A stretch of DNA of 64,000 nucleotides from IMG/VR virus record IMGVR_UViG_3300009181_000033, positions 233,895-297,894 of that record. One strand, given 5' to 3'. The translations under genes were made by a program, and so were the position numbers. The notes under the pieces are model-generated. The model was not told the origin of the DNA and searched no databases. It saw nothing but the letters and a program-made list of their open reading frames with translations. Numbering within the stretch: the stretch's first letter is position 1; every line of letters begins with the position of its first letter. Positions 10,418-34,116 of this stretch are shown here, one piece after another.

Positions 10418-10612
10418 TTAAATATCATCAATGATTTCTTTGACAAAGAGACGAAGCAAATTTTCCTTCACGATGTCATCGTCATCGTCGTTTTCTTTGC
10501 CGCTTTTTACTAAAGTAAGACGAGCAGTTGGCGGCAAATAAGCCATTCCACCACCTCGCGAATCACCAAGTTTTCTTTTGATTATATCTCTTCGACTCTT
10601 CTTTTTTGGCAT
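10418..10612 (-). CDS. Small hypothetical protein with C-terminal ENLLRLFVKEI helix (putative internal head protein)
   Basis: ORF preceded by ATATTTAT motif; helix resembles the head-targeting motif. Confidence 0.5.
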   Translation of the reverse strand: MPKKKSRRDIIKRKLGDSRGGGMAYLPPTARLTLVKSGKENDDDDDIVKENLLRLFVKEIIDDI

Positions 10613-10626
10613 GGCGCCAATAAATA

Positions 10627-10848
10627 TTACATTCCTGCGATTAATGCCTGAACAGCAGTTGAGACTCGTTCCTGCAACTCCCTCGGCAAAGCAGAAAGAA
10701 GAACATAATTCTCTGCCTTTGTTGTGTCTTGAGGCATTCCACCAGCCATATAATCAGAATTTGTTTTTACAATGGCCCTAATTACCAAAGGCGGTAATCC
10801 CACCCTAGTTGAATAAATCGGTTGATATAAATCTACTTTATTTTCCAT
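10627..10848 (-). CDS. Hypothetical protein
   Basis: 73 aa ORF, SD AGAGGA, tightly packed. Confidence 0.6.
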   Translation of the reverse strand: MENKVDLYQPIYSTRVGLPPLVIRAIVKTNSDYMAGGMPQDTTKAENYVLLSALPRELQERVSTAVQALIAGM

Positions 10849-10849
10849 T

Positions 10850-11029: not shown

Positions 11030-11062
11030 TTTATCACCGCCTTTAATCGAGAATGTTTAAAT

Positions 11063-11137: not shown

Positions 11138-11180
11138 GATAATTTATATCTTATGAAGATATGTGTTTTTGTATATTTTT

Positions 11181-11328: not shown

Positions 11329-11400
11329 GTCTACTTGCCCAATCTTTACGATTGGACCAGAACCAGAAACACATCTATCAAATTTTATTTTTAATAAGGG

Positions 11401-11661
11401 TTACCTTTGAGGACTTGATTGAAGATTTTGACTCAAGTTCAACCAGTTATTTTGTTCTTTTTGAACCAAATCATTTATCTTTTTTGACTCCTGTTGTGCC
11501 CAGGATCTATATACTTCCTGCTCCAATTCTTCCTGTTCTTTTTTTAGAGCTGAAAGGATGGGTTTCCTAAATTTATCCAATAAATGCTGTTTGGTATTTG
11601 CGTCTCTAATTAATGTTTCATAAATCTCAAGCATTTCAGATGCCGTGAAGGCCACATTCAT
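11401..11661 (-). CDS. Hypothetical protein
   Basis: 86 aa, ATGA overlap with upstream gene. Confidence 0.6.
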   Translation of the reverse strand: MNVAFTASEMLEIYETLIRDANTKQHLLDKFRKPILSALKKEQEELEQEVYRSWAQQESKKINDLVQKEQNNWLNLSQNLQSSPQR

Positions 11662-12272
11662 TGAGTGTCACCAATTCCATAGGCATAGTCAAGTTTAAAT
11701 ATATTTGCCCAAGCCTTACATAGTCTCTTATAAGTAAAGACTTCCCAATCTTCACCATCATGAAATTCTATAGTCTTATCAGTTACCTTGATGGTGGTGA
11801 TCTCTGGAAGAAGAATTGAGCCTTCATTGATCAAAACATCGACTGCGTTCCTAAAATCTACATCCTCAAACTGAACTGTGACCTTCTCACCAATGGAATT
11901 TTTAACATCCTGGGCTGGTAAATCCTGCAAGTCAGAAGCCGGCACTAAAAAGTGATGCTCGATTTTTTCATTATCGGGCTCTTCGACTGCTTCCCTTCCC
12001 GTCTCCTCATCTTCATCTTCATCTTCATCTTCATCTTGATCTTCATCTTCATCTTGATCTTCATCTTCATCTTCATCTTCATCTTGATCTTGATCTTGAT
12101 CTTGATCTTGAGTCTGGCTTGGTCGACAAGCGCTCTCTTCACCGGTTAAAAAAATCTCTATGTTTGACATCATGTTTGATATCTGTTCCTTTGTGGCAGG
12201 ATCCCAATCGCTACCTGAAATCTGAAAGAGAAGAGAGTATAGAAATAGTGACTCGGTTTTGGAAAGATTCAT
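11658..12272 (-). CDS. Hypothetical protein with (DQ/DE)n acidic tract
   Basis: Start moved to MNLSK (12272) because SD AGGAGA precedes it and a terminator lies just upstream. Confidence 0.65.
   Translation of the reverse strand: MNLSKTESLFLYSLLFQISGSDWDPATKEQISNMMSNIEIFLTGEESACRPSQTQDQDQDQDQDEDEDEDEDQDEDEDQDEDEDEDEDEETGREAVEEPDNEKIEHHFLVPASDLQDLPAQDVKNSIGEKVTVQFEDVDFRNAVDVLINEGSILLPEITTIKVTDKTIEFHDGEDWEVFTYKRLCKAWANIFKLDYAYGIGDTQ
12007..12110. repeat. Hexamer microsatellite (TCTTCA/TCTTGA)n encoding Asp-Glu/Asp-Gln
   Basis: About 17 contiguous hexamers, directly visible. Confidence 0.95.
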
Positions 12273-12287
12273 TAGATGTTCTCCTAT

Positions 12288-12318
12288 AAAAAGGACGGGA
12301 ACTTTCGTTCCCGTCCTT
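12288..12318 (-). terminator. Intrinsic terminator
   Basis: AAGGACGGGAAC-GAAA-GTTCCCGTCCTT-TTT. Confidence 0.85.
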
Positions 12319-12347
12319 GCCACATGTCAAAGCAAAATTAATATATT

Positions 12348-12741: not shown

Positions 12742-13725
12742 TCACTTGATAATTCCAGCCAGCTTCTGCCAACGCTCAACAACAACAGAGCCATCTCTCT
12801 GATAGCCCGAAGTCTGTTGTTTCTTTTTATCTCCCTTTTCACCAGTCAAAGCATTGACTTCGGGTGAATATGGGGGATTGATGTCCATTTTTCCTGATTC
12901 AATGTCTTTCTTCACTGCAGCCAACTCACTTGGCTCGATTGCCGGCATGTCAACCTTGGGCGGCATCCATCCTTCAACAGCCCTAGTGTCTGCTGTGGAG
13001 GCCCAATTTTCTTTGACATGTTCAGCTGCGGCCTCGAGCGTATCAAACCCATTAGCCTGGAATGCTTTAAGGATTTCTTCAGGCACAGGAAGGAACTTTC
13101 CTCCCTTGGAGGCCATCTCCACAAACTTATCTGCGACAGCTTCTGGTGTGAGTGAATCAAGATCAGTGTCAGAAGGCTTGCCTTTTCCACCGTGAGCAGC
13201 TGTCCAAACATTAAGAACACCAACCAATTGCTTGCCAGGAAGATCAATCTGCAAACCACCGACTGAAGCGCTGGGGTCAACCATCAGGGTGGCTGCCCAG
13301 CGATGATGGCCGTCCATGATGTGATTGTCATTAGAAATAATGGCCCCCAAATCACCACCAGCTCCGCCGCTGAAGCTTCCCATCTTACCCATCATTTGAA
13401 TGGCCATTCCAACAAATTTGCCAAAGTCCATGGTTGTTTGGGTTGCTCTCAAGCTGTCAGCAGGTGAATTTGTCTGGCCGCCGGAAGCAACATCGTCCTC
13501 GGCATCTTCGTCTTCTAGTCCTTTTGAAGCCAAGGCCTTTGCGATAGAAGGATCAACTTGACTCAGGTTCGTAGGGAAAAGACTAGGGTCAATTTTAGCA
13601 GGTGAAGCATCCTCAAACAACGACAAAAGAGAGCGAGAATGCCCCTTGGGGGAACGTATTTCCTTCAAAGCTTTTCTTGCTTCAGATGCTATCAAATTTC
13701 TCAGTTGTAATTCTGTCAATCTCAT
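12742..13725 (-). CDS. ParB/Srx-like domain protein with head-targeting N- and C-terminal motifs
   Basis: L.ATQ...IISNDNHIMDGHHRWAA; N-terminal MRLTELQLRNLIASEA; C-terminal ERWQKLAGIIK. Confidence 0.7.
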   Translation of the reverse strand: MRLTELQLRNLIASEARKALKEIRSPKGHSRSLLSLFEDASPAKIDPSLFPTNLSQVDPSIAKALASKGLEDEDAEDDVASGGQTNSPADSLRATQTTMDFGKFVGMAIQMMGKMGSFSGGAGGDLGAIISNDNHIMDGHHRWAATLMVDPSASVGGLQIDLPGKQLVGVLNVWTAAHGGKGKPSDTDLDSLTPEAVADKFVEMASKGGKFLPVPEEILKAFQANGFDTLEAAAEHVKENWASTADTRAVEGWMPPKVDMPAIEPSELAAVKKDIESGKMDINPPYSPEVNALTGEKGDKKKQQTSGYQRDGSVVVERWQKLAGIIK

Positions 13726-14066
13726 TTCTTCTTTTCCTCTCCGTCCTCAGACGAAACCTTCTTCAAAACGTTCATGGCCTTAACAGTGTCCTCCGGAGAA
13801 GCCTGCATCAGCTTGGCAAAAATATCACCAAACACGGAATTGTCGAGGCTGTTTCTCTTTCCAGCCCGTAGATTGGAAACAGCGGTCTTCAACTTGCCAA
13901 CATCTGCTCCCAAAGCGTCTGCCATTTTTTTAATATCAACATTGCCTTCAACATCAGCGGTCTCGCCACCCACCTTTGTTGGGCCGGCCTCAAAAATATT
14001 GTGGAGAGTCATCTTTTGCTTTTCTGATTCAACTAATTTTCTCAAAAGTCTGGCCGTTAATTTCAT
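13722..14066 (-). CDS. Putative internal head protein
   Basis: N-terminal MKLTARLLRKLVESE; ATATTTAT directly upstream. Confidence 0.55.
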   Translation of the reverse strand: MKLTARLLRKLVESEKQKMTLHNIFEAGPTKVGGETADVEGNVDIKKMADALGADVGKLKTAVSNLRAGKRNSLDNSVFGDIFAKLMQASPEDTVKAMNVLKKVSSEDGEEKKK

Positions 14067-14087
14067 AAAAATAAATATTCAACAAAA

Positions 14088-14435
14088 TTAATTTTTTGGC
14101 CCGTGTGACCCTTTTTTTCGCAGCACCAACGGATTTTCTTTAACCAACCAAAACTCCTTGTCAATGGGCGGATCTTCCCCTTCACGAAACCACATCAACT
14201 TTCTACCGCCAGTAGATGCATAAACACCTATTATCGTTATGTGCCCCGCGTGGATCAGGTCGTGACAAGAGTGACAGACAATCGCAAGGTTTTCGTTATT
14301 GTTGGTACAGCGCGGATCACACCTGGGAATTATATGGTGGACATTGAGCGCATCAGGATTTGAAAAGTCACAGATCTCGCAACTATCCTTCAACAGACCT
14401 TCCTGTCCACTCCTCCTACGACTCTTTCGCTTCAT
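14088..14435 (-). CDS. HNH endonuclease
   Basis: CEIC...VHHIIP...NNNENLAIVCHSCHDLIH; start MKRKS after AGGTGA. Confidence 0.85.
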   Translation of the reverse strand: MKRKSRRRSGQEGLLKDSCEICDFSNPDALNVHHIIPRCDPRCTNNNENLAIVCHSCHDLIHAGHITIIGVYASTGGRKLMWFREGEDPPIDKEFWLVKENPLVLRKKGSHGPKN

Positions 14436-14442
14436 GGGAAAA

Positions 14443-14907
14443 TCACCTGCCAGACATTGCAGCCTTAAAAACAAGACTGCCGATCGCATGGTGCCTGCCG
14501 TCCACCTGATAAAAGAGGTTCACGCCCTTCTCCAATGCCCACAGGATTAACCAATTTAATGTCTTAACATCAAGCTTGCTCCTTGCCTCGGCAACCTCGT
14601 AATGTGTCAAATCGGCGCGGGATGGAAGGACTATCTTGGATATAATGACACCCGACAAATCAGGCCTCATCCACTCCGGGAACACATCCGCCTCGACCCT
14701 CCAGGAACAGTTGTACGACTTGCATGTGTTGGGTCGACCCTCGTAGTCGGTGCACTTTCCACCAGCAAGAAAGAAACAAGGTCGACCAGGATACATCTGG
14801 TGCCCCTTTATATCGGCAGACAACCAGCCCTCACAACAACCCGTGCAAGGACCACAAGCACGAGAAGAATCTTGCAAAACAGGCAATGACGTCACTTTAT
14901 CTGTCAT
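14443..14907 (-). CDS. YkgJ-like CxxCxxCC cysteine-cluster protein
   Basis: CGPCTGCC...CFFL...CTDYEGRPNTCKSYNC. Confidence 0.8.
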   Translation of the reverse strand: MTDKVTSLPVLQDSSRACGPCTGCCEGWLSADIKGHQMYPGRPCFFLAGGKCTDYEGRPNTCKSYNCSWRVEADVFPEWMRPDLSGVIISKIVLPSRADLTHYEVAEARSKLDVKTLNWLILWALEKGVNLFYQVDGRHHAIGSLVFKAAMSGR

Positions 14908-14992
14908 GCCACAATCATATGCGGTATTTCGAACTTGTCGATGGCCTCTCGAATATATTCTTCAAGTAACACTATTGACATGACATTAAATA

Positions 14993-16444
14993 CTACATGC
15001 ATGTGCTAATTCTGAATATATGTGATCCACAACCATATATCCTTGAAACTTTCGCTGCAAGGGCAACTTGTCTCTCTGTTAAACCTAGTTGTGCACGATA
15101 TCTAAATCGATCGTAACGTAACTCATTATCTGTGTACCAATAATCAGGTGCTGTGCAACCGACTCTTTCAAAACCAGCAGAAACGTATCCATTGCCAGTT
15201 CCAACTCTTCGATCAACATACGTCATGATCTGCGAATATCCATTCTTGGAAGACCAATCACGAGCCACCTTTAGCAACTTTGATAATCCGCCAGGAACAG
15301 ACATTCCCTTCTGTGTACTAAATCTAGCAATCTCAATGGAATTTTCATATTTTCCGCCATGACGAGGCACGCGTAAAGACAAAGCTGCAACGATATTGCC
15401 ATTTCTGTCACGCAGACCCCAGCAAACTTTGCTGGGTGTGTAACCAGCAAGATGTGTCGCATTAAAGAACGCTTTCTGTTCTTTCGTAGATAGCTCAATA
15501 ACTGTGGTTGACCAAGTCTTACATTTTGAAGGGTGAAATCCTAGCCTATGTTGAATCATTGATTTTATGATGTCTTGCTTGTCACGCCACTCATCTTCAA
15601 ATATTTGCAACAAGCTTATACCGACTGATTCAGCCATTTCAGCTTTCACAGAATGGGACTTCTTATCAAATTCTTCAGTGGGCTTGCCTGCTTCACTGTG
15701 CCAAAACAAACCATGACACTCAATTCCAAATTTTTTAGATGGAACATAAATGTCAATCTCTTTCGGTGATAATGTTTTTCTGTCACCGCTTATTGCGTCC
15801 GCAGATAAAGAACGAACATACTCAAATACAGATAACTCCCAATTTGATTTGCCGACTGGACAACATCGATAACAACGGCTACCTCTTTCAAACGCCTGCA
15901 ATGTTTTTTGTTGTCTCTCTCCGCATTTAAGACACTCGAATGTGAGATATTGCTGCTGCCTTGAATGATATTCATTCAAAGAAGTAATCAGCTTAAACTC
16001 AAGTGATCTCTCACTAATTCTTTCATTTAATGCCGATGAAAACAGTGTTTTATTTTCCGATATTCTTTTTATAGTCTCTTGTGCGTGACGTTTGCCATAA
16101 AAATGGTTGCCTTCACCGGTTGCCCGCTCAGCTGCAGCGGCTATTCTGACATCCGTCTCTTTTGTCTTCCCTCTGTTCCAGGCCTCGTTTGCACCGCCTC
16201 GAGCCCCTCCTTCTTTCATCGCAAGACGAGCGTGCTCTTTACAATACTTCTTAAAAGTAAAAGCAACATATCGAACATCAGCACCACACTCAGCGCAAAC
16301 AGGTTGAATTCCTCCATGCTGCGCTTGAACTGTGTAATCAAATGAAGACAACTTGTGCTCAATTCTCACATGATCAGAAAATCTCTTCAGATCAACATTT
16401 GAATAGTCGCACAACTTACACTTCATGTCGTTAACGGCTTGCAT
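14993..16444 (-). CDS. Hef-like homing endonuclease: C2H2/Zn fingers + NUMOD3 + Vsr-like nuclease + GNAT/Mom-like domain
   Basis: CKLC..H...H; WNRGKTKETD; GEGNHFYGKRH; EIDIYVP..FGIECHGLFWHS..QIFEDEW; EIARF...VPGGLSKLL..TYVDRR. Confidence 0.75.
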   Translation of the reverse strand: MQAVNDMKCKLCDYSNVDLKRFSDHVRIEHKLSSFDYTVQAQHGGIQPVCAECGADVRYVAFTFKKYCKEHARLAMKEGGARGGANEAWNRGKTKETDVRIAAAAERATGEGNHFYGKRHAQETIKRISENKTLFSSALNERISERSLEFKLITSLNEYHSRQQQYLTFECLKCGERQQKTLQAFERGSRCYRCCPVGKSNWELSVFEYVRSLSADAISGDRKTLSPKEIDIYVPSKKFGIECHGLFWHSEAGKPTEEFDKKSHSVKAEMAESVGISLLQIFEDEWRDKQDIIKSMIQHRLGFHPSKCKTWSTTVIELSTKEQKAFFNATHLAGYTPSKVCWGLRDRNGNIVAALSLRVPRHGGKYENSIEIARFSTQKGMSVPGGLSKLLKVARDWSSKNGYSQIMTYVDRRVGTGNGYVSAGFERVGCTAPDYWYTDNELRYDRFRYRAQLGLTERQVALAAKVSRIYGCGSHIFRISTCM

Positions 16445-16544: not shown

Positions 16545-18416
16545 TCAGATGACATTCATGTCGAGAACGGTGACGGTGCCGTAGAAGTCCGAGCGGACCA
16601 TCTTCTTGCCGTAGCGGGTCATCACACCCTTACGAGGTGTGAAATCCTCAGGCGCGAAGATTGTAGGGGTCACAATCAGGGGCACGTAAGGAGCGTAGAC
16701 GTATCCGGTCTCGAGGTAGCTGCCACCCTTGTAGCCGACGAGGATCTTGTTGCGAACGAAGTAAGGATCCTTGTAGACGGTGAAGCGGTTGGAGAGGGTG
16801 CCGATGGCCTCTGCACCGATGGTGAAGGGGCTAGCGACCTGGCCCTCGCCGTCCATGGAGAACTTGGGCTTGTAGAGAACTGAGCTCTCGAGGATGGTGG
16901 CGACATCGGGTCCGGTGACCATGAAGTTCGCAGAACCACGGAGTGTCTTGCGGTGGATGGTGTTGGCGACGTCGATGATGGTCTCGATGAGAGTCTCGTA
17001 CCACTCGCGGACGGTGCCTGTGAACTGAGGGCCGATCTGGTATTGGTCGGCTAGTGTTACGCGGCCACCGGTTGTCTTGTTGACGAAGCGACCGGGTGAG
17101 CGGCTCCAATAGTAGTTGGCGCCATTGGCTTGGCTGACTAGGTCGTTGAGGATCTCACGGTCGATCTCGAGGGCGATCTGCTCTGAGAGGATTGAGGTGA
17201 GCTCCACCTCGGCGTCCATGCTGTGGTACGCGTTGAGGTCCTGAGCGAGCTCGGGTGACCACTTGGCGCGTAGCTTGCGGGTCTCGGCGGTGATGCTGAT
17301 GGCCTCGATCTTGATGTCGATCTCTGGGATGACTGGTGAGGGGGTCGAGCCGAAGTCGGACTCGAAGGAGGGGACGGTGATGGTGGCACCGCTGGTGCTG
17401 TCCACGTTGAGCTTTTGGTCAAGAACGAATGTGAACTTGCCGGTAGCGGTGGGAGTAAAGGCAGCAACGCCGTTGGCACCCTTCACGAGCATGAGAACGT
17501 GAGTGCCGTTGAGGGCATTTGGTGTAAATGTGAAGGCCGAGTTGTCCCAGTCACCGCGCTTGTTGAGGCGGCGAAGGTTCTTGATGCCTGTGCCGCCTTG
17601 GTAGGTGTCGCCCCAGGCGTCGGCGCCGGTGATGCCGGCGTGGAGAGCGATCTGGTTGACGGCGAGGCGGTCAATGGTTGAACCGATTGAGTCAAGCTTG
17701 ACAATCTCGAACATCGCATCGAGCTGACCGAGGTCGAGCGCAGTCTCAACCTGGGCATCGAAGTCGGCGTAGCGGGCGTTAGAACCTGAGAAGTCGAGGG
17801 CTGATCTGAGAACGCCGCCTGCAACCCAAGCTCCTGTACCGCTCCATGAACCGGAGGCGGCGACAGAGGAGTTTGTGAGGTCGACTGTTAGGTTCGAGCC
17901 GGTAACGCGTGAGTAGCCGACGTTAACGAGGTCGTATTGGCCGCCGGTGGCTAGAGAGCCGCTCTGAACGCCTCTGCCGGTGGGGTTGTTGTAGATTGAC
18001 TGGCCACGGGTGTAGGTCGAGGTTGAGTCGGACCCTGGGACGCCAACATTGCTACCGTATGTGTAGTCGAGGTAGAAGATGAGGCCTGATGGGAGACTCA
18101 TTGGTTGAATTGAGACGAGCTCGTTGGCAACGAGGCCACCGAATACGCGGCGAACGATTGGGAACGCGATGTTGGAAAAGCCCTGGATCTGACCGGAGCC
18201 GGCGAGGTTGCCACCGCCGGTTGAAAGGCCATTGCTCTCCTTAAGGACCTGGGCAGCCTGGTTCTCTAGGAGCTGTCCCATCATCTCACGCTTCTGGCCG
18301 TCGAGGCCACGGAGGAGGCCTGTGCGGCTCCACTTCTCGGTGAGGCGTGCGCGCTCGGCACCGACGTGCTTCTCGCGGATGCCCTGAGCTAACTGATCTA
18401 AACTAAAATACTTCAT
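16545..18416 (-). CDS. Major capsid protein, T4 gp23-like
   Basis: LLENQ, PIVRRVF..L.ANELVSIQPMSLPSGLIFYL, A.TRKLRAKWSPELAQDLNAYH..DAE.EL..ILSE.I.LEIDREI, GYVYAPYVPL, F.PRKGVMTRYG. Confidence 0.97.
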   Translation of the reverse strand: MKYFSLDQLAQGIREKHVGAERARLTEKWSRTGLLRGLDGQKREMMGQLLENQAAQVLKESNGLSTGGGNLAGSGQIQGFSNIAFPIVRRVFGGLVANELVSIQPMSLPSGLIFYLDYTYGSNVGVPGSDSTSTYTRGQSIYNNPTGRGVQSGSLATGGQYDLVNVGYSRVTGSNLTVDLTNSSVAASGSWSGTGAWVAGGVLRSALDFSGSNARYADFDAQVETALDLGQLDAMFEIVKLDSIGSTIDRLAVNQIALHAGITGADAWGDTYQGGTGIKNLRRLNKRGDWDNSAFTFTPNALNGTHVLMLVKGANGVAAFTPTATGKFTFVLDQKLNVDSTSGATITVPSFESDFGSTPSPVIPEIDIKIEAISITAETRKLRAKWSPELAQDLNAYHSMDAEVELTSILSEQIALEIDREILNDLVSQANGANYYWSRSPGRFVNKTTGGRVTLADQYQIGPQFTGTVREWYETLIETIIDVANTIHRKTLRGSANFMVTGPDVATILESSVLYKPKFSMDGEGQVASPFTIGAEAIGTLSNRFTVYKDPYFVRNKILVGYKGGSYLETGYVYAPYVPLIVTPTIFAPEDFTPRKGVMTRYGKKMVRSDFYGTVTVLDMNVI

Positions 18417-18458: not shown

Positions 18459-20528
18459 TCACTTAACAATGCCCGCGAGACGTGCCCAGCGCTCGGCCTC
18501 GAAACCTTCGTTGAGGTTCGTGGCGGCCGCACGGGGGGACGGACGCGAGGATGAACCAATGACTCCGTAGCTGGTTGACTCTGACAACTGCTTGGATGAG
18601 GTACCACGGAGTGCCTTGGTGAGGCTCTCGTACACAAGCTTGACTTCACGCTCATTGCGGGCCTCGTCGAGGCGCTCAATCACTTCGGCCTTCTGGCGCT
18701 TAGTGAGCGACTCATTCTGGAGGAGCTTGTTTGTGTAGAGTAGCTTAGCATTGAACAGATTTGTTTCTGCCAACTTAGCGCGGAGAATAGCGGCCTCCGC
18801 AACCGTTTTTCTGGTCTCGCCATTGATGACGTTACCTCTGCGGACAGCCTCTGTGAGCATGCCCTGGAGACGGCGGGTGCGCATCACCGACTCATTAAAC
18901 TTGCGAGCGTAGAAGTTGTAGGCCTCTTGCATCTTCTTGGCCTGCTTGGCCTTCTTCTGCTGCTCTTGCTTTGCCTTCTGGGCTGCGCCCTTCTGGCCTT
19001 TCTTCTGCTGTTCATTAGCCTGCTTCTCGGCCTGTTTGGCCTGGGACTCGGCTTGCTGCTTGCCTTTCTTGGCTTGTTGTGCCTTCTGCTTGGCCTCTGA
19101 CTGGAGACGGGCTTCGGCACGGAGATTGCGGCGGAGTGACTCTACAGTCTTGCCGGGTTCGTTTGACTGATCGCTGGGCTGCTCGGTGTCAGCGCCGTGC
19201 TCGGCGTCCTCGCCGTGGGCCTGATAAACCTGATCGAGCTCATCGAGCTCATCGAGCTCATTTGCGCTCTTGTCATCAGTGTGCTTGGAGGCGTGGGACT
19301 CTTCCTCGTCTTGGCCTTCGGTTGTGAGGTCGATGTCGACGAATGGATCGCCAAGGTCATCATCCTCGAAATCATCGGAAACATCGCCTGGGCCATGGCC
19401 CCAGCTCTGTGCCTTGGTCTCCGCCTCTTCACGGAGGGCTCTCATGCGACCAATCTCGCGGCGTAGCATGTTTTCATCAATCTCAACGACAACATCATTA
19501 CCAAGTCCGTGTGATTCCATTGTAGCTCCTTCTAAATCAAGATCTTCGTCTTCATCTTCTCCGCCTTCGACCTCTTCATCTCCACCGAGATCAAGGTCTT
19601 CCCCGCCTTCATCTTCCCCGCCTTCGGCCTCTTCATCTCCACCGAGATCAAGGTCTTCCCCGCCTTCATCTTCCCCGCCTTCTTCACCTTCGGCCTCCTC
19701 ACTGGGTGGCTCTGTGATCAAATCGACACCAATGTCGTCAAGGCTATCCTCGAGCTCGTCGGGTAAGTTGGTTAGCTTGAGTGTGAGTTCTGATTCAGAC
19801 AAATTTCTTCTATTTCTTTTCATTTTCTGCTCCGTGAGCTTGGTAAGGGTTGAATAACAATCTTTCAAAACCTTCAAATTCAGCTGTTTTTTATGCGAAT
19901 TGTCAGTGTTTTCGTTTAAGTGCTTATACATATCGCGAACTTTAGCAATAGTTGCAGAAAGACGATCAGAATATCCTCTGGATTCTCTAATTATTTTTCC
20001 GGCGCCTCTCAAAAGTTTGACGTTCTGTACAATGGATCGAATACTAGATTCGATAACTACACTTTTCTTTGATGACATGAGCATACCTAATTTTTCAGCT
20101 GCCTCCCTGCTCAATTCGTATTCTCCAGAAGGGGTTCTTAAAGCATCTAAATCCAAAGTCACTTTCCCTTCTTCATCGGGCATTGATATTGCATCAGCAA
20201 TGGCATCATGGGTCCCGAGTGCCACACTCGAATCAAGTGGAACATCATCAAAATCATCGACAGACGAACCTGCCGGCAGAGCTGTGTCATCTATTGCAGA
20301 CGCAGCTGCTGCAGTCTCAGGAAATTCGTCCATAAGCAGTTTTTCATTGTTGGCCTCAGACTCCTCAGAATTCTCAGCCTCAGAGCTCTCACCAAGCAAT
20401 TGGTGTTCTATGAGATCACGAATACGAGGCGTCACTGCCTCCAGCAAGGCTCTTTTGGCGTTATCTTCTGCCACTTCTTTTAATTTTTTAACATCGGCCA
20501 ACGCCTCTTCATAAAGCTGCTTAGACAT
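18459..20528 (-). CDS. Prohead core/scaffold protein, T4 gp22-like
   Basis: Directly upstream of MCP; acidic and coiled-coil; many LxE sites; NLFNAKLLYTNKLL..LT..QK; C-terminal ERWARLAGIVK. Confidence 0.8.
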   Translation of the reverse strand: MSKQLYEEALADVKKLKEVAEDNAKRALLEAVTPRIRDLIEHQLLGESSEAENSEESEANNEKLLMDEFPETAAAASAIDDTALPAGSSVDDFDDVPLDSSVALGTHDAIADAISMPDEEGKVTLDLDALRTPSGEYELSREAAEKLGMLMSSKKSVVIESSIRSIVQNVKLLRGAGKIIRESRGYSDRLSATIAKVRDMYKHLNENTDNSHKKQLNLKVLKDCYSTLTKLTEQKMKRNRRNLSESELTLKLTNLPDELEDSLDDIGVDLITEPPSEEAEGEEGGEDEGGEDLDLGGDEEAEGGEDEGGEDLDLGGDEEVEGGEDEDEDLDLEGATMESHGLGNDVVVEIDENMLRREIGRMRALREEAETKAQSWGHGPGDVSDDFEDDDLGDPFVDIDLTTEGQDEEESHASKHTDDKSANELDELDELDQVYQAHGEDAEHGADTEQPSDQSNEPGKTVESLRRNLRAEARLQSEAKQKAQQAKKGKQQAESQAKQAEKQANEQQKKGQKGAAQKAKQEQQKKAKQAKKMQEAYNFYARKFNESVMRTRRLQGMLTEAVRRGNVINGETRKTVAEAAILRAKLAETNLFNAKLLYTNKLLQNESLTKRQKAEVIERLDEARNEREVKLVYESLTKALRGTSSKQLSESTSYGVIGSSSRPSPRAAATNLNEGFEAERWARLAGIVK
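19561..19682. repeat. 57-bp tandem repeat (GGEDLDLGGDEE[A/V]EGGEDE) in scaffold
   Basis: ccgccttcg unit recurs at 19561 and 19618; slightly more than two copies. Confidence 0.9.
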
Positions 20529-21101: not shown

Positions 21102-21247
21102 CTATAACCTCAAGATTTTTTTGTAGAAGATCCCTTGACCAAAACGGGGGTTGCTGCAACAATTGGATTAGCTATTACATTTGCAGATGGATTAGCTGTG
21201 CCGCCTGAACCAATTGTTAAATTTGGCTTATACGATGAAGCACTTAG
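20628..21247. repeat. 87-bp perfect direct repeat (20628-20714 = 21161-21247); a second, 31-bp identical block lies at 20832-20862 = 21377-21407
   Basis: Base-by-base comparison. Confidence 0.9.
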
Positions 21248-21671: not shown

Positions 21672-21917
21672 TCAAATGTTTCCACGGAGACGACGGCGTG
21701 TTTCAGCTATTCTTGCGAGACGACGGCGTAATCTTGTCTCCTCAATTTTTAATGCCTTCATGTAATCAATTGTTTTTTCTAAAGCCTTTTCGCTCCCAAC
21801 CTCGCCTGCATCAAGCTCCTCTGTGTCCTTGGCACGATCCTCAGTGGACTCCATATCGCCAAACTTGGAGACCTCCTGGAGTATGATTTTACGAAGCATG
21901 GTATTTGTCAATTTCAT
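21672..21917 (-). CDS. Putative small prohead core protein
   Basis: MKLTNTMLRKIILQEV motif; Arg-rich C-terminal coiled coil; SD GGAGA. Confidence 0.6.
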   Translation of the reverse strand: MKLTNTMLRKIILQEVSKFGDMESTEDRAKDTEELDAGEVGSEKALEKTIDYMKALKIEETRLRRRLARIAETRRRLRGNI

Positions 21918-21972: not shown

Positions 21973-22389
21973 TTATTTCTTAAGAGAAGAACCCATAAAA
22001 GCAAGTTCTGCCCACTTTGAAGTCACTTCTTCTCCAAAGATTTCATTGGGTTCAGCTGAGGCCAATGCTTGTTCGACTAAACCACCAGCTTGAGAAGTAA
22101 ATTTGCCCTTTGTATCTCCTTCAAGCATTTTTGGAAGTGTGGATGCAGCAGTGTCAGCCAAAATCATTTCCATTATTTTGTTTCCCCCCGACTCCTTTTT
22201 TATGGCATTAGAAAGATAAGGTGTTATTTTTCTTTGGGGTTGTTGTAAAGCACTTGAAGTTGTGGACTTGGTAGAATGAATAACCTGATTTCCTCGTGAG
22301 GAATTTGGCGAGCCTATTCCTTCGCTAAGTATTTCAACCAAACATTCCTTTACAATATTTTTTAATTCAAATTTTGACAATTTCATCAA
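21973..22389 (-). CDS. Putative prohead core protein
   Basis: MKLSKFELKNIVKECLVEILSEG; C-terminal SKWAELAF. Confidence 0.6.
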   Translation of the reverse strand: MMKLSKFELKNIVKECLVEILSEGIGSPNSSRGNQVIHSTKSTTSSALQQPQRKITPYLSNAIKKESGGNKIMEMILADTAASTLPKMLEGDTKGKFTSQAGGLVEQALASAEPNEIFGEEVTSKWAELAFMGSSLKK

Positions 22390-22410: not shown

Positions 22411-23022
22411 TCACTTCCTTGTGGCCAATATGTCATTAATGATTCTGTCAATTCTATCAGATTTGTTAAAAACTTTTCTTAATTCAAACGAATTAATTGT
22501 TTTCCCCTCAGGAAGCATAAAGGCTCCAGGAGTAGAGGGCTCAGAAACGTAGTCCCAACATATCAATTGAAAATCATCCTGAACGATGTGATAATCTCCT
22601 TGTTTTTTTGTGGAACCGACTCCCCTAGAAGATATTCCCAGCTTGACACCTGATTCCACCAAGGACTGCAGTATCTTTCCTGATGGTGTGTCCAGAAGCT
22701 CCACTGTCCCATAAACAACCCCCTTTTCAAGATGAGCTTCTTTGACTATGTGAGAAACATTCTTGAGGTTGACGACAGAAGAATCTGGGTGATCCAATTC
22801 GCCGAGGGCCCTATTTTCAGAAATAAACTTTTGATAATTTCTAATTTCTCTCTCGAGAACGGCAGTGGGATATATCCTTCCATTTTGGTTCAAGGTGTCT
22901 GATTTTTGAAGGATGCCCTTCATGACAACCTTGCCACCATTCTTCTCACGAGATTCTTTGATCATCTCGGGAGTATAGTCAAAAACTTCATACGAATTTA
23001 GAAGCCTTAAATCTTGTCCCAT
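22411..23022 (-). CDS. Prohead protease, T4 gp21-like
   Basis: NQNGRIYP, ALGELDHP (His), LGISSRGVGS (Ser), WDYVSEPSTPGA (Asp). Confidence 0.95.
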   Translation of the reverse strand: MGQDLRLLNSYEVFDYTPEMIKESREKNGGKVVMKGILQKSDTLNQNGRIYPTAVLEREIRNYQKFISENRALGELDHPDSSVVNLKNVSHIVKEAHLEKGVVYGTVELLDTPSGKILQSLVESGVKLGISSRGVGSTKKQGDYHIVQDDFQLICWDYVSEPSTPGAFMLPEGKTINSFELRKVFNKSDRIDRIINDILATRK

Positions 23023-23025
23023 AGC

Positions 23026-27051: not shown

Positions 27052-27372
27052 TTACACTATTTTCTCGCCAGCACCAGTTGACTTAAGAGTAACTTTCTTG
27101 CCTTTCGATTGCGGCGGCTGGGTGGTGTCGACATACTGCATTGGAGAACCGATTATCCTATTGAGCAACTTCTCCAAATCCTCCAAAAGTTTGCCCACCT
27201 CAGCTTTTGCTTTGACGCTAGCGTCATTCTTAAATGTCTCAACAGCCCCAAGTAATTTTGTAGCACTTGACATTTGCTTGGAGGCAGCATTGTGATCTTC
27301 GCCTTCATTTAACTTCGTGGCGAGTTCTTCTCTGATGATTTTTTTTAGCCTGTCTAATTCAATTTTTGGCAT
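27052..27372 (-). CDS. Putative internal head protein
   Basis: MPKIELDRLKKIIREELATKLNEG motif; ATATATAA upstream. Confidence 0.6.
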   Translation of the reverse strand: MPKIELDRLKKIIREELATKLNEGEDHNAASKQMSSATKLLGAVETFKNDASVKAKAEVGKLLEDLEKLLNRIIGSPMQYVDTTQPPQSKGKKVTLKSTGAGEKIV

Positions 27373-32700: not shown

Positions 32701-32902
32701 CCGTTAACCACCAAGTTAAAAAATCGATGTATTCAGGTGAGATGCCCGTGGTTTTTGTGTGAAATATGTCACCGCCAACGAAAATGTGATCGACGTCTTG
32801 GGACTTACAATCGTCAATGAAAGCTTGAAGTATTTGACGATACTCTTCATGTCTAGACAACGCACGAATGTGCACGTCAGCAGTGTGGGCAAATTTAAGC
32901 AT
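29762..32902 (-). CDS. Fused SbcD/Mre11 (gp47) nuclease - SbcC/Rad50 (gp46) ATPase
   Basis: AD.H, GGDIFH, LGNHD, FHG, LGDIH; then GPNRTGKSS, Q-loop SAQG, coiled coil, CSGMEK, FFIIDEGFGTLD, VITH. Confidence 0.92.
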   Translation of the reverse strand: MLKFAHTADVHIRALSRHEEYRQILQAFIDDCKSQDVDHIFVGGDIFHTKTTGISPEYIDFLTWWLTAMAEVAPVHLTLGNHDGNLVNLSRQDAVSPIVEAMKNKNVHLYKKSGVYEIDKGFNLCVFSCFDEEGWSSVKPVGDCINIAAFHGPVRGSSTETGWDIDEGVNVDFFKDFDFAFLGDIHKPQFLGHRNKKPWIAYPGTPVQQNYAEQIEHGYLLWEIESAKKWSVTTRPLPNPKPFITVDWAGDLSSTVQLVKKLPSGSRFRIRSQVQITQDDVHRLSEILRTSMAATEVTFKSDVSFDKQVVKASEDTVINKTDLRSVDTLARLLKDYHKEANLSQVEVDEVTDQVKTYLSTAVTSDDSNRSSKWSLRHLTWDNLFSYGEGNQINFDNLNGIVGIFGPNRTGKSSIVGSIMYSLFNTTDRGPMKNINVCNVRKPHCYSKAVLDHNGTTYVLERQTTKSTNKKGVVSASTSLNLFKMREDGEMDDLCGEQRNDTEKTIRHLLGSPDDFLMTSLSAQGETSQFISQGSTKRRSILSRFLDLDIFDKMYELASKDVNSYKAQLKNFPDRNWDELKKSSEDSISECQKTILDLTFRIAEHQTTLTSLRHEASTHTSAIVVEADVTSQRKKVAAVSSELKEHEDNYAILLVEMEDHRSKISSLTSLLAKYDIDFLKKKSESKRKIESSVLELRHLHEKELSLLTQQKKSLKILDDVPCGDDYPTCKFIKDAHSNKTKVEEQKKKADEALRQLDELKILLSEMEDENIEDKISKHEKAAALMAKLSLEMSKKETEIEKHKSLCTPLQKNLEEEKQRLVDMEIALNNEENFELVSIKKKIESYSDDIKEWDMAKLSAASQHGKLLASLENLQIEKSTRDDLLKSMRIRELISSAFCKKGIPLLVTKSQLPIINAEVQKILQGIVDFTIEVESDEDSDSLEMYINYGDSRRIIELCSGMEKTIAAISLRVAMINVSSLPKPNFFIIDEGFGTLDNAGVESCSRLLTSLKRYFKTIFVITHVDGIKDSADHIIEISKNEKDSKVELI

Positions 32903-32943
32903 GCATGCTTAAACTACCCACCATTAGCCTAAATGTACAAAAA

Positions 32944-34116
32944 TTAAGCCTTGCTCAAAGCACGTGCGCCGGCGCCGAGGGCCCGTGTGCCAAGGCTGGC
33001 TATTTCGCCGGCCGAGGAGCCCATTTCAGCACCCATCGATCCCAATTCTCCGGCCGTACTCATTGCCTTTGAAGCAGCTTTTCCGGCAGCCAAGGCACCA
33101 TGAGCAGCATCCTTTAACGAAGCAAAGACTTGACCCAATGTTTCACCCAAGTGCATAAAGGCACTGATCAACATGGGAAGAAAGAGGGCAACTTTTAAAA
33201 CCTTGAAAATTGCATCTTTTTCCTTGGAAGAAATTTCAATCTCATGGCCATGTGAATCCTTGCCTTTTTCTTTCTTTGTGAAGTCAGCATAAGATATTGG
33301 CTTTTCTTTCTTAAAGACCTTGGCAAAAGCATAGTAAGCAGCGTACTGTGCCTGGGGTGGGAAGGCGGTAACCTCGAGCCACTTTGATTCCACAGAATGA
33401 AGGAAGTGTTCTATTTTTTCACAAATTTTACTAGCCTTATCAAGGCCAAATTTTCTTAGTGTCCAAACCAAGAGCTTAAGAGCAAAAATACCCAGACCAA
33501 GATAACCAACAACTGCTGTCTGTACAGCCCACCACGTGGTGGCCAAGGATGCGACCCCCGTCAGGACAGCAATCTCATGTAGTCGGCTCTTCTTGTTTTT
33601 TTCGATGGCCTCGAGGAGTTGATCCAATTGCTCCTCCAGAAACATGGAATTCTGGGAGAATTCCCCGTGCATAATCGATTCATTTTTGGCAGGGACTGCT
33701 GTAGCGATCTCTTTCTCGATATCAATAGACTTAATCTGTTCAAAACCAGCATTGATCTTAGCTAGTTCAGGAACAGTGGCCATGATTTGTTCTACGCTAG
33801 TGCCAGACTCTTCCAAGGCTTCCGTGAATTTTTTGACATCGCCTATAATGTCAAGGCTTTGAAGTGATTGCACAGCCTTGTTCAACTTCGCAATAATTTC
33901 TTCTGCCTTGGAAGCTATTTCTTTCTTTACTTTTTCACCGAGCCCCTTGAATGGTTGCTTTATGGCATCCAAAAATCCTTCATTAACAAGGTATTCTCTC
34001 GCCAATTCTTCACGTATCATTCTCCTCAAGCTACTTTCGCTGATTGAAAGTCTGGTCCCGCCAATATGCACGGGTTGGTTGAACACGATTTGTCTTGAAG
34101 AAGCTCTCTTTTTCAT
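32944..34116 (-). CDS. Putative internal head/ejection protein with hydrophobic helices
   Basis: ISESSLRRMIREELAREYLVNEG motif; long apolar segments; ATATTTAC just upstream of MKKRA start. Confidence 0.55.
   Translation of the reverse strand: MKKRASSRQIVFNQPVHIGGTRLSISESSLRRMIREELAREYLVNEGFLDAIKQPFKGLGEKVKKEIASKAEEIIAKLNKAVQSLQSLDIIGDVKKFTEALEESGTSVEQIMATVPELAKINAGFEQIKSIDIEKEIATAVPAKNESIMHGEFSQNSMFLEEQLDQLLEAIEKNKKSRLHEIAVLTGVASLATTWWAVQTAVVGYLGLGIFALKLLVWTLRKFGLDKASKICEKIEHFLHSVESKWLEVTAFPPQAQYAAYYAFAKVFKKEKPISYADFTKKEKGKDSHGHEIEISSKEKDAIFKVLKVALFLPMLISAFMHLGETLGQVFASLKDAAHGALAAGKAASKAMSTAGELGSMGAEMGSSAGEIASLGTRALGAGARALSKA

What the first reader, a model, noticed from the sequence alone, without database searches (positions are those of the whole stretch)
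10418..34116. Head-cargo addressing code shared by at least seven dispersed proteins
Seen, a recurring amphipathic helix: MRLTELQLRNLIASEA (13725), MKLTARLLRKLVESE (14066), MKLTNTMLRKIILQEV (21917), MKLSKFELKNIVKECL (22389), MPKIELDRLKKIIREEL (27372), LSISESSLRRMIREEL (34116 gene), VEIDENMLRREI (scaffold) and KENLLRLFVKEI (10612 gene). A second, C-terminal motif is shared by the scaffold (ERWARLAGIVK), the ParB-like protein (ERWQKLAGIIK) and loosely the 22389 gene (SKWAELAF). The helix is usually followed by an [L/I]xE site (LNE-G, LSE-G, IFE-A, LFE-D, VNE-G), like the T4 gp21 cleavage consensus and the MCP site VLKE-S. Established: T4 uses a short N-terminal capsid-targeting sequence that gp21 removes. 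Inference: these are portable tags that recruit unrelated cargo to the prohead core for later injection.
Basis: partly seen in the sequence, partly recalled or inferred. Interest (0 to 1): 0.75.

Follow-up and report, generated by a model that had tools for sequence, protein, structure and literature searches.

The report
Shared head-targeting tags on phage proteins
Nineteen otherwise unrelated proteins of this 298-kb freshwater T4-type phage carry the same 22-residue helix containing the head protease's cutting motif, and a few also end like the scaffold protein, which most likely marks them for packing into the virus head: a larger, two-tag version of a trick known from phage T4.

Summary
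The recurring N-terminal helix is real. A profile built only from relatives' tags finds 20 sites in 19 ORFs of this 297,894-bp phage genome (12-36 bits; noise is 7.4 bits or less). The scaffold-internal and 10612-gene instances score at noise. Selection acts on the protein, not the DNA, and the tagged proteins are otherwise unrelated. The consensus is MK[LI][TS]xSQL[RK][KR]I[IV][RK]EE..[VL]LxE[GE]. It holds [LIV]-x-E sites at residues 14 and about 22, the specificity of T4 gp21, whose homologue (Peptidase_S77) lies in the window. The C-terminal RWxKLAG[IL]xK motif is the invariant end of the scaffold across far-T4 phages. It is copied onto a ParB/Srx-like protein, a HAD-like protein and others, directly after a V-x-E site. 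Both tags change ends among homologues, so they are portable. The tag profile matches 4,984 protein clusters worldwide. All 8 tag-bearing viral contigs that are at least 75% complete encode an S77 protease. The best reading is a T4-style capsid-targeting system with two removable tags. Packaging, cleavage and injection are inferred, not shown, because the phage is uncultured. I found no description of it in the searchable literature.

The parts
13660..13725 (-). N-tag (residues 1-22, MRLTELQLRNLIASEARKALKE) of the ParB/Srx-like cargo protein (gene 12742-13725). A further L-F-E|D site at 13609-13620 marks the start of the folded core.
   Evidence: 17.8 bits with the relatives-only profile. Orthologues carry canonical tags. 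AF2: helix 5-24, disordered 24-36, core from about residue 40. E38 is nearly invariant in 56 homologues. Coordinates checked.
12742..12786 (-). C-tag of the ParB/Srx-like protein: VVVE|RWQKLAGIIK plus the stop codon.
   Evidence: A hydrophobic-x-E directly precedes RW in most homologues. AF2: disordered 302-312, then helix 313-322.
13989..14066 (-). N-tag of the 114-aa protein (gene 13722-14066), ending at I-F-E26|A.
   Evidence: 14.3 bits. ATATTTA lies at -12 from the ATG..
21852..21917 (-). N-tag of the 81-aa head-module protein (gene 21672-21917), between the protease and the scaffold.
   Evidence: 26.6 bits. Orthologues in more than 20 related loci keep MKLTSxLLKKIIAEEVAKF.
22318..22386 (-). 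N-tag of the 137-aa head-module protein (gene 21973-22386, ATG start), ending at L-S-E22|G.
   Evidence: 25.0 bits. Orthologues are conserved as ..KECLVEILxEG.
21973..22029 (-). C-terminal SKWAELAF motif of the 137-aa protein, a diverged relative of the scaffold-type C-tag.
   Evidence: SKWAxLAF is conserved in about 30 orthologues..
27301..27372 (-). N-tag of the 106-aa protein (gene 27052-27372), between the terminase and the portal, ending at L-N-E23|G.
   Evidence: 17.8 bits. Orthologues read MPKLTISQLRKIISEEVxVLREG.
33979..34116 (-). N-terminal 46 residues of the 390-aa protein (gene 32944-34116, ATG start). A 22-residue leader is followed by the tag LSISESSLRRMIREELAREYLVNE|G. The mature part has strongly hydrophobic segments.
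   Evidence: 16.7 bits. ATATTTA at -12 supports the ATG at 34116. Maximum 19-residue hydropathy is 2.0.
18459..18512 (-). Scaffold C-terminus L-N-E|GFEAERWARLAGIVK plus the stop codon (scaffold gene 18459-20528).
   Evidence: About 75 scaffold ORFs or C-terminal fragments in the related IMG/VR loci end in RW[AS]xLAG[IL] within four residues of the stop. Variants of the same ending occur in immuto, Mel-JY01-type phages, RM378 and LR756508.
19422..19493 (-). Scaffold internal helix VVE|IDENMLRREIGRMRALRE|E. It is near-invariant in the clade but does not match the tag profile.
   Evidence: Conserved in 43 scaffolds. Scores 2.0 bits against the tag profile.
22411..23022 (-). Prohead protease, T4 gp21 family.
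   Evidence: Pfam Peptidase_S77, 6.1e-25.
16545..18416 (-). Major capsid protein, T4 gp23 family. The predicted maturation site V-L-K-E60|S lies at 18228-18254.
   Evidence: Pfam Gp23, 1e-76. The site is conserved in 85 of 86 relatives and aligns with Q-V-L-N-E|T of cyanophage gp23.
10418..10471 (-). C-terminus of the 64-aa protein (KENLLRLFVKEIIDDI).
   Evidence: 0.8 bits. No orthologues in the related loci.

Best explanation
This is a capsid-targeting (addressing) system of the T4 kind, in a freshwater far-T4 jumbo phage, built from two short removable tags.

Tag 1 is a 22-residue amphipathic helix, normally at the very N-terminus, with consensus MK[LI][TS]xSQL[RK][KR]I[IV][RK]EE..[VL]LxE[GE]. 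Tag 2 is the peptide RW[AQ][KR]LAG[IL]xK at the C-terminus. Tag 2 is the scaffold protein's own conserved end.

Proposed course of events:
1. The tagged genes are scattered over the genome but are transcribed from the same ATA[N]TTA promoter class as the tail, neck and scaffold genes.
2. Tag 1 brings the protein into the scaffold core that assembles on the portal. Tag 2 occupies the site that normally receives the scaffold's C-terminus, which by analogy with other phages is the inner face of the capsid shell.
3. Once the shell closes, the gp21-type S77 protease cuts after [LIV]-x-E. It cuts inside and just after tag 1 (E14, E22; E38 in the ParB-like protein) and directly in front of tag 2 (V-V-E|RW; L-N-E|G in the scaffold).
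4. The tags leave, and the mature proteins stay in the head with the DNA.
5. The larger ones (ParB/Srx-like, HAD-like, the membrane-type 390-aa protein) are probably injected. The small conserved head-module ones (81, 137 and 106 aa) are more likely core components.

Shown here: the motifs, their position, portability, conservation and site content, the T4-type protease and capsid, and the co-occurrence with S77 protease. Inferred: steps 1 to 5 as functions.
For: The motif is real and acts at protein level. It sits on 19 mutually unrelated proteins.

T4-type head machinery lies in the window: Gp23, Peptidase_S77 and Portal_T4.

Cleavage-type sites:
- I-x-E14 occurs in 71 of 87 tags and L-x-E21/22 in 40 of 87.
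- Such a site is present in 18 of 18 tagged genes against 32% of other genes.
- The MCP's own L-[KR]-E60 is conserved in 85 of 86 relatives.
- The T4 record reads L-T-E65 in gp23 and L-R-E10 in gp24. Those are the positions where PMC9958956 says gp21 cuts.

Three tagged genes are conserved members of the head module in more than 20 relatives. The ParB-like gene sits next to the MCP gene in distant far-T4 contigs.

Tag 2 equals the scaffold C-terminus in every scaffold of the clade, and variants occur in immuto, Mel-JY01-type phages, RM378 and LR756508.

Portability:
- ParB-like homologues carry the LAGI motif at the N-terminus, or the tag-1 motif at the C-terminus, or only a short propeptide such as MIKLINLLKE|D.
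- HAD-like homologues behave the same way.

AF2 models show a terminal helix at each end of a confident core. In the ParB/Srx-like model low-confidence linkers separate each helix from the core. In the HAD-like model the terminal helices themselves have low confidence.

Promoter-like ATA[N]TTA precedes 9 of 15 tagged genes against 59 of 370 others (p = 2e-4). It also precedes the tube, sheath, gp13 and scaffold genes.

Association with the protease, for contigs found by the tag's DNA pattern alone:
- 17 of 25 long IMG/VR contigs encode Peptidase_S77, and 8 of 8 that are at least 75% complete do.
- Five of these genomes were scanned with the tag profile and carry 5-28 tagged ORFs each.
- The MCPs of those five are 47-66% identical to this one.

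T4 precedent: a conserved CTS on otherwise diverse internal proteins, removed by gp21 (PMC3012670, PMC9958956, PMC5694885).
Against: - There is no direct evidence that any tagged protein is in a virion, is cleaved or is injected. The genome comes from a freshwater metagenome and no RNA run holds it.
- The binding partner of either tag is unknown. The MCP plus scaffold-C-terminus complex prediction scored 0.00, which is no answer.
- The tag has no detectable sequence similarity to the T4 CTS or to T4 gp67, gp68 or gp22.
- Thirteen tagged genes lie among replication and auxiliary genes such as PolA, gp32, RecA/UvsX and TnpB.
- Bacterial chromosomal proteins carry 4-13 internal repeats of a similar helix, so the core of the motif is not phage-exclusive.
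- One tagged ORF is only 35 aa long and may not be a gene.
- The timing of the ATA[N]TTA promoter class is inferred, not measured.
Confidence: 0.6

Rival explanations
1. The tags do target proteins to the prohead core, but the tagged proteins are only assembly material. They would be extra scaffold or core components, like T4 gp67 and gp68, that are chopped up and expelled. They would not be cargo kept for injection.
For: Most tagged proteins are small (62-181 aa), have no recognisable domains and are often acidic. Three are fixed members of the head module. T4 gp67 and gp68 are degraded to peptides (PMC9958956).
Against: Two tagged proteins have confident globular enzyme-like folds, a HAD-type and a ParB/Srx-like one. 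One is membrane-type. The tagged genes form variable arrays of up to about 20 consecutive genes in relatives. That pattern is more typical of an accessory arsenal than of assembly parts.
Confidence: 0.15
2. The N-terminal helix is a shared docking or oligomerisation module for proteins that act in the infected cytoplasm, for example by binding one common host or phage hub. It would have nothing to do with the capsid.
For: Thirteen tagged genes lie among replication and auxiliary genes. The helix is a generic charged amphipathic helix, and similar repeats occur in cellular proteins. There is no virion evidence.
Against: - The tag is on conserved head-module proteins and on the MCP-adjacent ParB-like protein.
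- It regularly contains and ends with the protease's site type.
- It is combined on the same proteins with the scaffold's own C-terminal peptide.
- All 8 tag-bearing viral contigs that are at least 75% complete encode S77 protease.
- T4 internal-protein genes are likewise scattered away from the head genes: the ipII/ipIII-type ORFs lie near 67-68 kb and the head genes at 101-108 kb.
Confidence: 0.15
3. The similarity is chance, or convergence of low-complexity amphipathic helices, and has no common function.
For: Tag-like helices exist in unrelated bacterial proteins.
Against: There are 20 sites of 12 bits or more, against none in reversed or shuffled sequence. Among the top 150 library matches, 140 have a tag starting within 3 residues of the protein's first residue. 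In related loci 106 of 108 hits lie on the coding strand. About 1.1 Mb of four other T4-superfamily phages gives no match.
Confidence: 0.02

Closest known systems
T4 capsid-targeting sequence (CTS) of the internal proteins IPII and IPIII, and the N-terminal propeptides of IPI, Alt and gp24 (Mullaney and Black 1996; PMC3012670, PMC9958956, PMC5694885)
   Same: Both are short N-terminal peptides on otherwise unrelated proteins. The genes are scattered away from the head genes. The peptide ends in hydrophobic-x-Glu. The protease family (Peptidase_S77/gp21) and the capsid family (gp23) are the same. The T4 record reads MKTYQEFIAE|A on two ORFs of 193 and 100 aa, the tag reported for IPIII and IPII.
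   Different: - There is no detectable sequence similarity.
- The tag is about 22 residues long, not about 10.
- It holds two nested cleavage-type sites.
- It marks 19 proteins here and up to 28 in relatives, against a handful in T4.
- A second, C-terminal tag exists.
- The tags can change ends or be repeated within one protein.
- Function is untested here.
Long N-terminal propeptides of head and ejection proteins in phiKZ-like giant phages (phiKZ, 201phi2-1, SPN3US; PMC5694885, PMC10052503)
   Same: Both involve a gp21-related prohead protease that cuts after Glu and propeptides thought to direct proteins into the prohead. The identical first 15 residues of the SPN3US paralogues gp53 and gp54 were noted there as CTS-like.
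   Different: Those propeptides are mostly longer than 100 residues, are not a shared portable motif, and use A/S/T-x-E sites. The capsid lineage also differs.
C-terminal shell-binding peptides: P22-type scaffold C-terminus, HK97 protease C-terminal targeting signal, encapsulin cargo-loading peptides (from my own knowledge, not checked with tools)
   Same: All are short terminal peptides that hold a protein on the inside of an HK97-fold shell. Cargo proteins can copy the peptide.
   Different: Here the peptide is the natural end of a T4-type scaffold and is reused by enzymes of the same phage. It is preceded by a protease site, so it would be cut off after loading. Its receptor is unknown.

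Membership tests
T4-type CTS / gp21-removed targeting propeptide | Short peptide at the N-terminus of proteins that are otherwise unrelated to each other. | tested here: met
   Of the 20 tags, 18 begin at the first residue of their ORF. One is a second, internal copy and one follows a 22-residue leader. The remainders of the proteins are unrelated.
T4-type CTS / gp21-removed targeting propeptide | The peptide ends at a gp21-type cleavage motif (hydrophobic-x-Glu), and the genome encodes a gp21-family protease. | tested here: met
   E14 in 71 of 87 tags and E21/22 in 40 of 87. Site present in 18 of 18 tagged genes against 32% of others. Peptidase_S77 6.1e-25. This is sequence-level only.
T4-type CTS / gp21-removed targeting propeptide | Sequence similarity to the T4 CTS (MKTYQEFIAE). 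| tested here: not met
   The tag profile finds nothing in the T4 genome at E up to 10. The best six-frame score is 10.1 bits, below the 12-bit line. It works like a CTS but is not the same sequence family.
T4-type CTS / gp21-removed targeting propeptide | The peptide is sufficient to carry a foreign protein into the prohead, and it is removed there. | not testable with these tools
   This needs expression or virion proteomics. The phage is uncultured.
T4-superfamily head (gp20, gp21, gp22, gp23 module) | Homologues of gp23, gp21 and gp20 in one module, with a scaffold gene directly upstream of the MCP gene. | tested here: met
   Gp23 1e-76 and Peptidase_S77 6e-25. Portal_T4 1.9e-74. The scaffold is recognised by position and by its conserved ends shared with far-T4 relatives. 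It shows no similarity to T4 gp22.
T4 prohead core proteins gp67 / gp68 | Sequence homology of the 81-aa and 137-aa head-module proteins to gp67 / gp68. | tested here: not met
   blastp gave no significant match (best E 0.14-4.4). Pfam and PHROGs gave none. Only size and gene position are alike.
Scaffold-terminus mimicry (shell-binding cargo peptide) | Cargo carries the same terminal peptide as the scaffold. | tested here: met
   RW[AQN][KR]LAG[IL] occurs at the end of the scaffold, the ParB-like protein and the HAD-like protein, and internally in g196257-197189. The same holds in relatives.
Scaffold-terminus mimicry (shell-binding cargo peptide) | The peptide binds the capsid protein or another defined receptor. 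| tested here: inconclusive
   Complex prediction of MCP plus the last 45 scaffold residues scored 0.00. The verdict was 'no answer'.
ParB/Srx superfamily (for the 327-aa cargo) | ParB/Srx fold with the conserved DGHHR-type motif. | tested here: inconclusive
   M-D-G-H-H-R-W is invariant in 56 homologues. In Foldseek the top hits are ParB, Noc, Atu1540 and Srx, but all have E of 0.07 or more and TM of 0.34 or less over whole chains. There is no Pfam hit.

The most novel reading that the evidence does not exclude
A widespread, undescribed, two-part and position-independent addressing code for phage heads. Tag 1 joins proteins to the scaffold core. Tag 2 is a copy of the scaffold's own shell-binding end, so that enzymes are loaded as encapsulin cargo is. 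Both tags are clipped off by the prohead protease. Far-T4 phages would then use arrays of up to about 28 tagged genes per genome, and thousands of protein families in lakes and oceans, as a large and fast-changing arsenal of injected proteins.
Probability: 0.35. Interest if true: 0.85.

Novelty: new variant of a known kind. Interest (0 to 1): 0.68.

Why it matters
How T4 brings proteins into its scaffold core is still called 'mysterious' in a 2023 review (PMC9958956), and only a few tagged proteins are known there. This clade offers far more to work with:
- hundreds of natural tag variants;
- two tag types;
- tags that swap ends;
- a scaffold whose end is copied by cargo.

That is enough variation to search for the receptor by covariation and to test the code with reporters. 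The tag profile also gives a simple sequence rule that would label about 5,000 currently nameless protein clusters from lakes and oceans as probable head-internal, possibly injected, phage proteins. Such proteins are a natural place to look for anti-defence factors. A short natural loading-and-release tag pair would also be useful for packing foreign proteins into phage capsids.

Tried and rejected
- tblastn of a 23-residue tag against 50,697 phage records found only one weak hit. It is too insensitive for a motif this short, so I replaced it with profile and degenerate-DNA scans.
- Complex prediction (MCP plus the last 45 scaffold residues) gave no answer. It is not used as evidence either way.
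- Pfam and PHROGs name almost none of the tagged proteins.
- Homology of the 81-aa, 137-aa and scaffold proteins to T4 gp67, gp68 and gp22 was not found.
- Foldseek of the ParB-like model against the PDB gave only weak ParB/Srx hits.
- Literature searches for the CTS concept, the motif strings and related wording found the T4 and phiKZ precedents but nothing on these motifs.
- Sequencing runs are DNA metagenomes only. The RNA runs hold 6% or less of the sampled words, meaning relatives.
- A DNA-level signal was considered and rejected, because synonymous codons vary.
- A paralogous gene family was considered and rejected, because there is no similarity outside the tag.
- A secretion signal was considered and rejected, because the tag is charged and has no hydrophobic stretch.
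- The scaffold-internal helix and the C-terminus of the 10612 gene were rejected as tag copies on score. The scaffold helix is itself near-invariant and might still be related to the tag's function.
- Very high-scoring library hits with 4-13 repeats turned out to be bacterial chromosomal proteins. They were set aside as a caution.
Full report
WHAT THE WINDOW IS. The window is the last 64 kb of a single 297,894-bp virus record that came from a freshwater metagenome. It encodes a T4-type head module on the minus strand:
- large terminase;
- a portal split by an intein;
- a 285-aa protein;
- a prohead protease of the gp21 family (Peptidase_S77, 6.1e-25);
- two small proteins and two paralogues;
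- a 689-aa acidic scaffold;
- a gp23-family major capsid protein (1e-76).

The nearest named phages by capsid protein are an uncultured 484-kb phage (LR756508, 50% identity), Flavobacterium phage immuto, Microcystis phage Mel-JY01 and Rhodothermus phage RM378. The phage therefore belongs to the 'far-T4' part of the T4 superfamily.

THE N-TERMINAL TAG IS REAL AND GENOME-WIDE.
- To avoid circularity I built a profile only from 69 non-redundant tags of related phages. It finds 20 sites of 12 to 36 bits in 19 ORFs of this genome, with a clean gap to the next score of 7.4 bits. Reversed sequences reach 7.4 bits.
- Residue-shuffled ORFs never reach 12 bits.
- The scaffold-internal VEIDENMLRREI scores 2.0 bits and the C-terminal KENLLRLFVKEI of the 10612 gene scores 0.8 bits, so both are at noise level.
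- Eighteen tags begin at the first residue of their ORF. One is a second copy inside a protein that also has one at its start (g192339-193265). One follows a 22-residue leader (the 34116 gene).
- The codons under the conserved residues vary freely (Leu as TTA, CTA, CTT, CTC or TTG; Arg as CGT, AGA, AGG, CGG or CGA). Selection is therefore on the peptide and not on a DNA or RNA signal.
- After removal of the tag the 18 proteins compared have no significant similarity to one another. Almost none match Pfam or PHROGs.
- About 19 of roughly 385 genes carry the tag.

ANATOMY OF THE TAG. From 87 tags that are less than 60% identical to each other (this genome plus relatives) the consensus is M-K-[L/I]-[T/S]-x-S-Q-L-[R/K]-[K/R]-I-[I/V]-[R/K]-E-E-[I/L/V]-x-x-[V/L/I]-L-x-E-[G/E]. 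Conservation stops after residue 23.
- A hydrophobic-x-Glu triplet ends at residue 14 in 71 of 87 tags. A second one ends at residue 21 or 22 in 40 of 87.
- In this genome every tagged gene has such a site in or just after the tag, against 32% of other genes in the same N-terminal span (p = 3e-9).
- The capsid protein has V-L-[K/R]-E60|S, with E60 conserved in 85 of 86 relatives. It aligns with Q-V-L-N-E|T of a cyanophage gp23.
- The T4 record itself reads L-T-E at residues 63-65 of gp23 and L-R-E at residues 8-10 of gp24. PMC9958956 places the gp21 cuts exactly there.
- The tag therefore contains the kind of site that this protease family cuts.

THE C-TERMINAL TAG IS THE SCAFFOLD'S OWN END. 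The motif RW[A/Q/N][K/R]LAG[I/L] occurs four times in the genome:
- at the last residues of the scaffold;
- at the last residues of the ParB-like protein;
- at the last residues of a HAD-like protein (g165413-166324, plus strand);
- 56 residues from the end of g196257-197189.

About 75 scaffold ORFs or C-terminal fragments in the related IMG/VR loci end ..L-N-E-G-x-E-x-x-R-W-A-x-L-A-G-[I/L]-(x)-K. Variants end the scaffolds of immuto (SRWQKLAGIIK), Mel-JY01 and a relative (ERMKKLAGIVK, NRLRKLAGLK), RM378 (ERIKRLAGL) and LR756508 (SRMQKLADIS). The gp22 proteins of cyanophage P-SSM7 and of T4 end differently.

A peptide kept at the extreme end of an otherwise fast-changing acidic protein, across capsid identities down to 37%, must do something essential. 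By analogy with other scaffolds (my own knowledge, not tested) that would be holding the scaffold to the shell.

In cargo proteins the motif is almost always preceded by hydrophobic-x-Glu (V-V-E|RW, I-L-E|RW). In scaffolds L-N-E|G lies eight residues upstream. The tag could thus be clipped off as well. The 137-aa head-module protein has a diverged form, SKWAxLAF, conserved in its orthologues.

THE TAGS ARE PORTABLE. Two enzyme-like families show it.
- The ParB-like family (271 matches, 120 listed and examined): close orthologues carry tag 1 at the start and tag 2 at the end. Some carry only a short propeptide such as MIKLINLLKE|DADP or MRFLLE|DADP. Distant ones carry the LAGI motif at the N-terminus followed by I-x-E (for example ..RLQKLAGILKE|D). 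Some carry a tag-1-like helix at the C-terminus (..KEQKLRKAIREEVRR..).
- All these propeptides end at the same conserved L-x-E|D-A-D-P boundary. The confident part of the AF2 model starts there.
- The HAD-like family (26 proteins) shows the same shuffling. One member has tag 1 at its C-terminus (18.6 bits), and others have short MRRLVDILFE|D starts.
- AF2 model of the ParB/Srx-like protein: helix 5-24, low-confidence linker 24-36, core 40-295 at pLDDT 96-98, low-confidence 302-312, helix 313-322.
- AF2 model of the HAD-like protein: helix 7-17, confident core, helix 294-299.
- Terminal helices flanking the core, and in the ParB/Srx-like model joined to it by low-confidence linkers, are what addressing tags should look like.

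DISTRIBUTION.
- The 484-kb relative LR756508 has 23 matches, again at the starts of unrelated small proteins and often followed by V-L-x-E.
- Eighty IMG/VR loci with capsid proteins 62-82% identical hold 108 matches, 106 of them on the coding strand. These include the orthologues of the 81-aa, 137-aa and 106-aa head-module proteins.
- Mel-JY01, LR756511, RM378, P-SSM7 and T4 give no match. Immuto gives two weak ones, one of which is really an N-terminal LAGI motif.
- A profile search of 1.84 billion cluster representatives found 4,984 with E of 0.001 or less. Of the best 150, 140 have a tag within three residues of the start, and all 150 have two or more tags, which is why they rank first.
- A degenerate DNA pattern for the tag hit at least 120 stretches of IMG/VR, where my own estimate is far fewer than one chance match.
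- Of 25 long contigs found that way, 17 encode a Peptidase_S77. All 8 that are at least 75% complete do.
- Five of these genomes were scanned further. They carry 5 to 28 tagged ORFs each, partly in dense arrays, and have capsid proteins 47-66% identical to this one.
- The tag is thus a property of one large branch of T4-type phages with genomes of 146-484 kb, and it travels with the gp21-type protease.

EXPRESSION CONTEXT.
- A promoter-like motif ATA[N]TTA lies upstream of the tube, sheath, gp13, scaffold and small-terminase-position genes. It precedes 9 of 15 tagged genes in my gene list against 59 of 370 others (p = 2e-4).
- Before many tagged genes it sits only 12-15 bases from the ATG.
- A second motif class (GGTGCAAAGTC .. 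GGTAtAAT) precedes 25 small genes, mostly at 60-110 kb, and no tagged gene.
- This suggests, but does not prove, that tagged genes are expressed with the structural genes even when they lie among replication and auxiliary genes. T4's internal-protein genes are scattered in the same way.

MOST LIKELY MECHANISM. I read this as a T4-style capsid-targeting system.
- In T4 a conserved N-terminal CTS is the only thing shared by a diverse set of internal proteins. It brings them into the scaffold core, is cut off by gp21, and can carry foreign proteins (PMC3012670, PMC9958956, PMC5694885).
- Here the same protease and capsid families are combined with a different and longer tag, many more tagged proteins, and a second tag copied from the scaffold's end.
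- Shown: the motifs, their statistics, position, portability, site content, conservation and co-occurrence with the protease.
- Inferred: late expression, docking to core or shell, cleavage, retention and injection.
- The small conserved head-module proteins may be core parts rather than cargo. The ParB/Srx-like, HAD-like and membrane-type proteins are the best candidates for injected cargo.

CAUTIONS.
- No particle proteome or culture exists.
- The receptor of either tag is unknown, and the one complex prediction gave no answer.
- The tag is not sequence-related to the T4 CTS, so it is filed as working like a CTS and not as a member of that sequence family.
- Bacterial chromosomal proteins with 4-13 internal copies of a similar helix show that the helix core is not exclusive to phages.
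- The ParB/Srx assignment of the 327-aa protein rests on an invariant DGHHRW motif and weak fold matches only.

NOVELTY. Searches of the held literature found the T4 and phiKZ-group precedents but nothing on these motifs. Neither Pfam nor PHROGs has a model for them. I rate it a new variant of a known kind: the principle is T4's. New here are the tag sequences, the scale, the dual and position-independent tags, and the copying of the scaffold terminus.

Noticed in passing
window 23880-27008 (-): The portal gene (1042 aa, against about 620 aa in relatives) is interrupted by an intein carrying an HNH endonuclease. Pfam: Intein_splicing 3.7e-12, HNH_3 1.6e-08. The Portal_T4 match resumes at residue 456.
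   Followed up: partly
window 14088-16444 (-): A 483-aa homing endonuclease (phrog_3339, 2.5e-73), a 154-aa ORF and a 133-aa HNH protein sit between the capsid gene and the two tagged genes. In relatives the tagged genes follow the capsid gene directly.
   Followed up: partly
whole genome; e.g. window 14067-14090, 34117-34140; g60000-110000: There are two promoter-like motif classes. ATA[N]TTA lies 26-46 bases upstream, with a Shine-Dalgarno sequence, before the tail and head genes, but only 10-17 bases (mostly 12-15) before the ATG of 29 genes. GGTGCAAAGTC..GGTAtAAT ends a few bases before the ATG of 25 small genes. Both suggest many leaderless or near-leaderless transcripts.
   Followed up: partly
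window 20586-21101 and 21110-21646 (-): Two tandem paralogues (171 and 178 aa) lie between the scaffold and the tagged core proteins. They share a C-terminal block (..SASSYKPNLTIGSGGTANPSANVIANPI..). They have no tag and no family match.
   Followed up: no
G000:C1:192339-193265 (-), locus L011:2339-3265: A 308-aa protein has two tags, one at residue 1 and one at about residue 81, flanking a Cys-rich module. In the global library all of the best 150 matches have two or more tags, each starting with Met. They could be polyprotein-like cargo or merged gene calls.
   Followed up: partly
proteins P0148, P0149 (loci L139-L141): Acidic bacterial proteins of 960 and 1146 aa sit in ordinary chromosomal neighbourhoods (DAGK, CNNM, guanylate kinase, a secretion ATPase). 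They contain 4-13 internal repeats of LTSDDLRSIIREEL-like helices that match the tag profile.
   Followed up: partly
window 18372-18416 (-): The capsid protein's own N-terminus, MKYFSLDQLAQGIRE, loosely resembles the tag (MK..S..QL...IRE). It does not reach the profile threshold.
   Followed up: no
window 19422-19493 (-): The scaffold-internal segment VVEIDExMLRREIxRM[RK]xLRE is near-invariant in 43 clade scaffolds, within an otherwise very variable acidic protein. It is flanked by V-V-E and L-R-E sites. Its role is unknown.
   Followed up: partly
G000:C1:49222-50442 and 63867-64832; 53121-55457; 85049-85609: The phage carries two TnpB/OrfB_IS605-type genes, a 778-aa protein with a bactofilin domain and an MlaC-like protein.
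   Followed up: no
window 11658-12323 (-): A 221-aa protein has a long run of alternating Asp/Glu and Gln (DQDQ..DEDEDE). It has no family match.
   Followed up: no
IMG/VR relative G022:C1:176275-180147: A complete 293-kb relative has two tandem capsid-protein paralogues, each about 63% identical to this one. Only one copy was seen in this genome.
   Followed up: no
locus L119 (immuto, record position about 102,800): Flavobacterium phage immuto, which lacks tag 1, has a 164-aa ORF starting ..RRMQKLAGIITE|S. That is the scaffold-end motif at an N-terminus followed by a cleavage-type site. The immuto scaffold gene is annotated as 'DNA polymerase phi-like protein'.
   Followed up: partly
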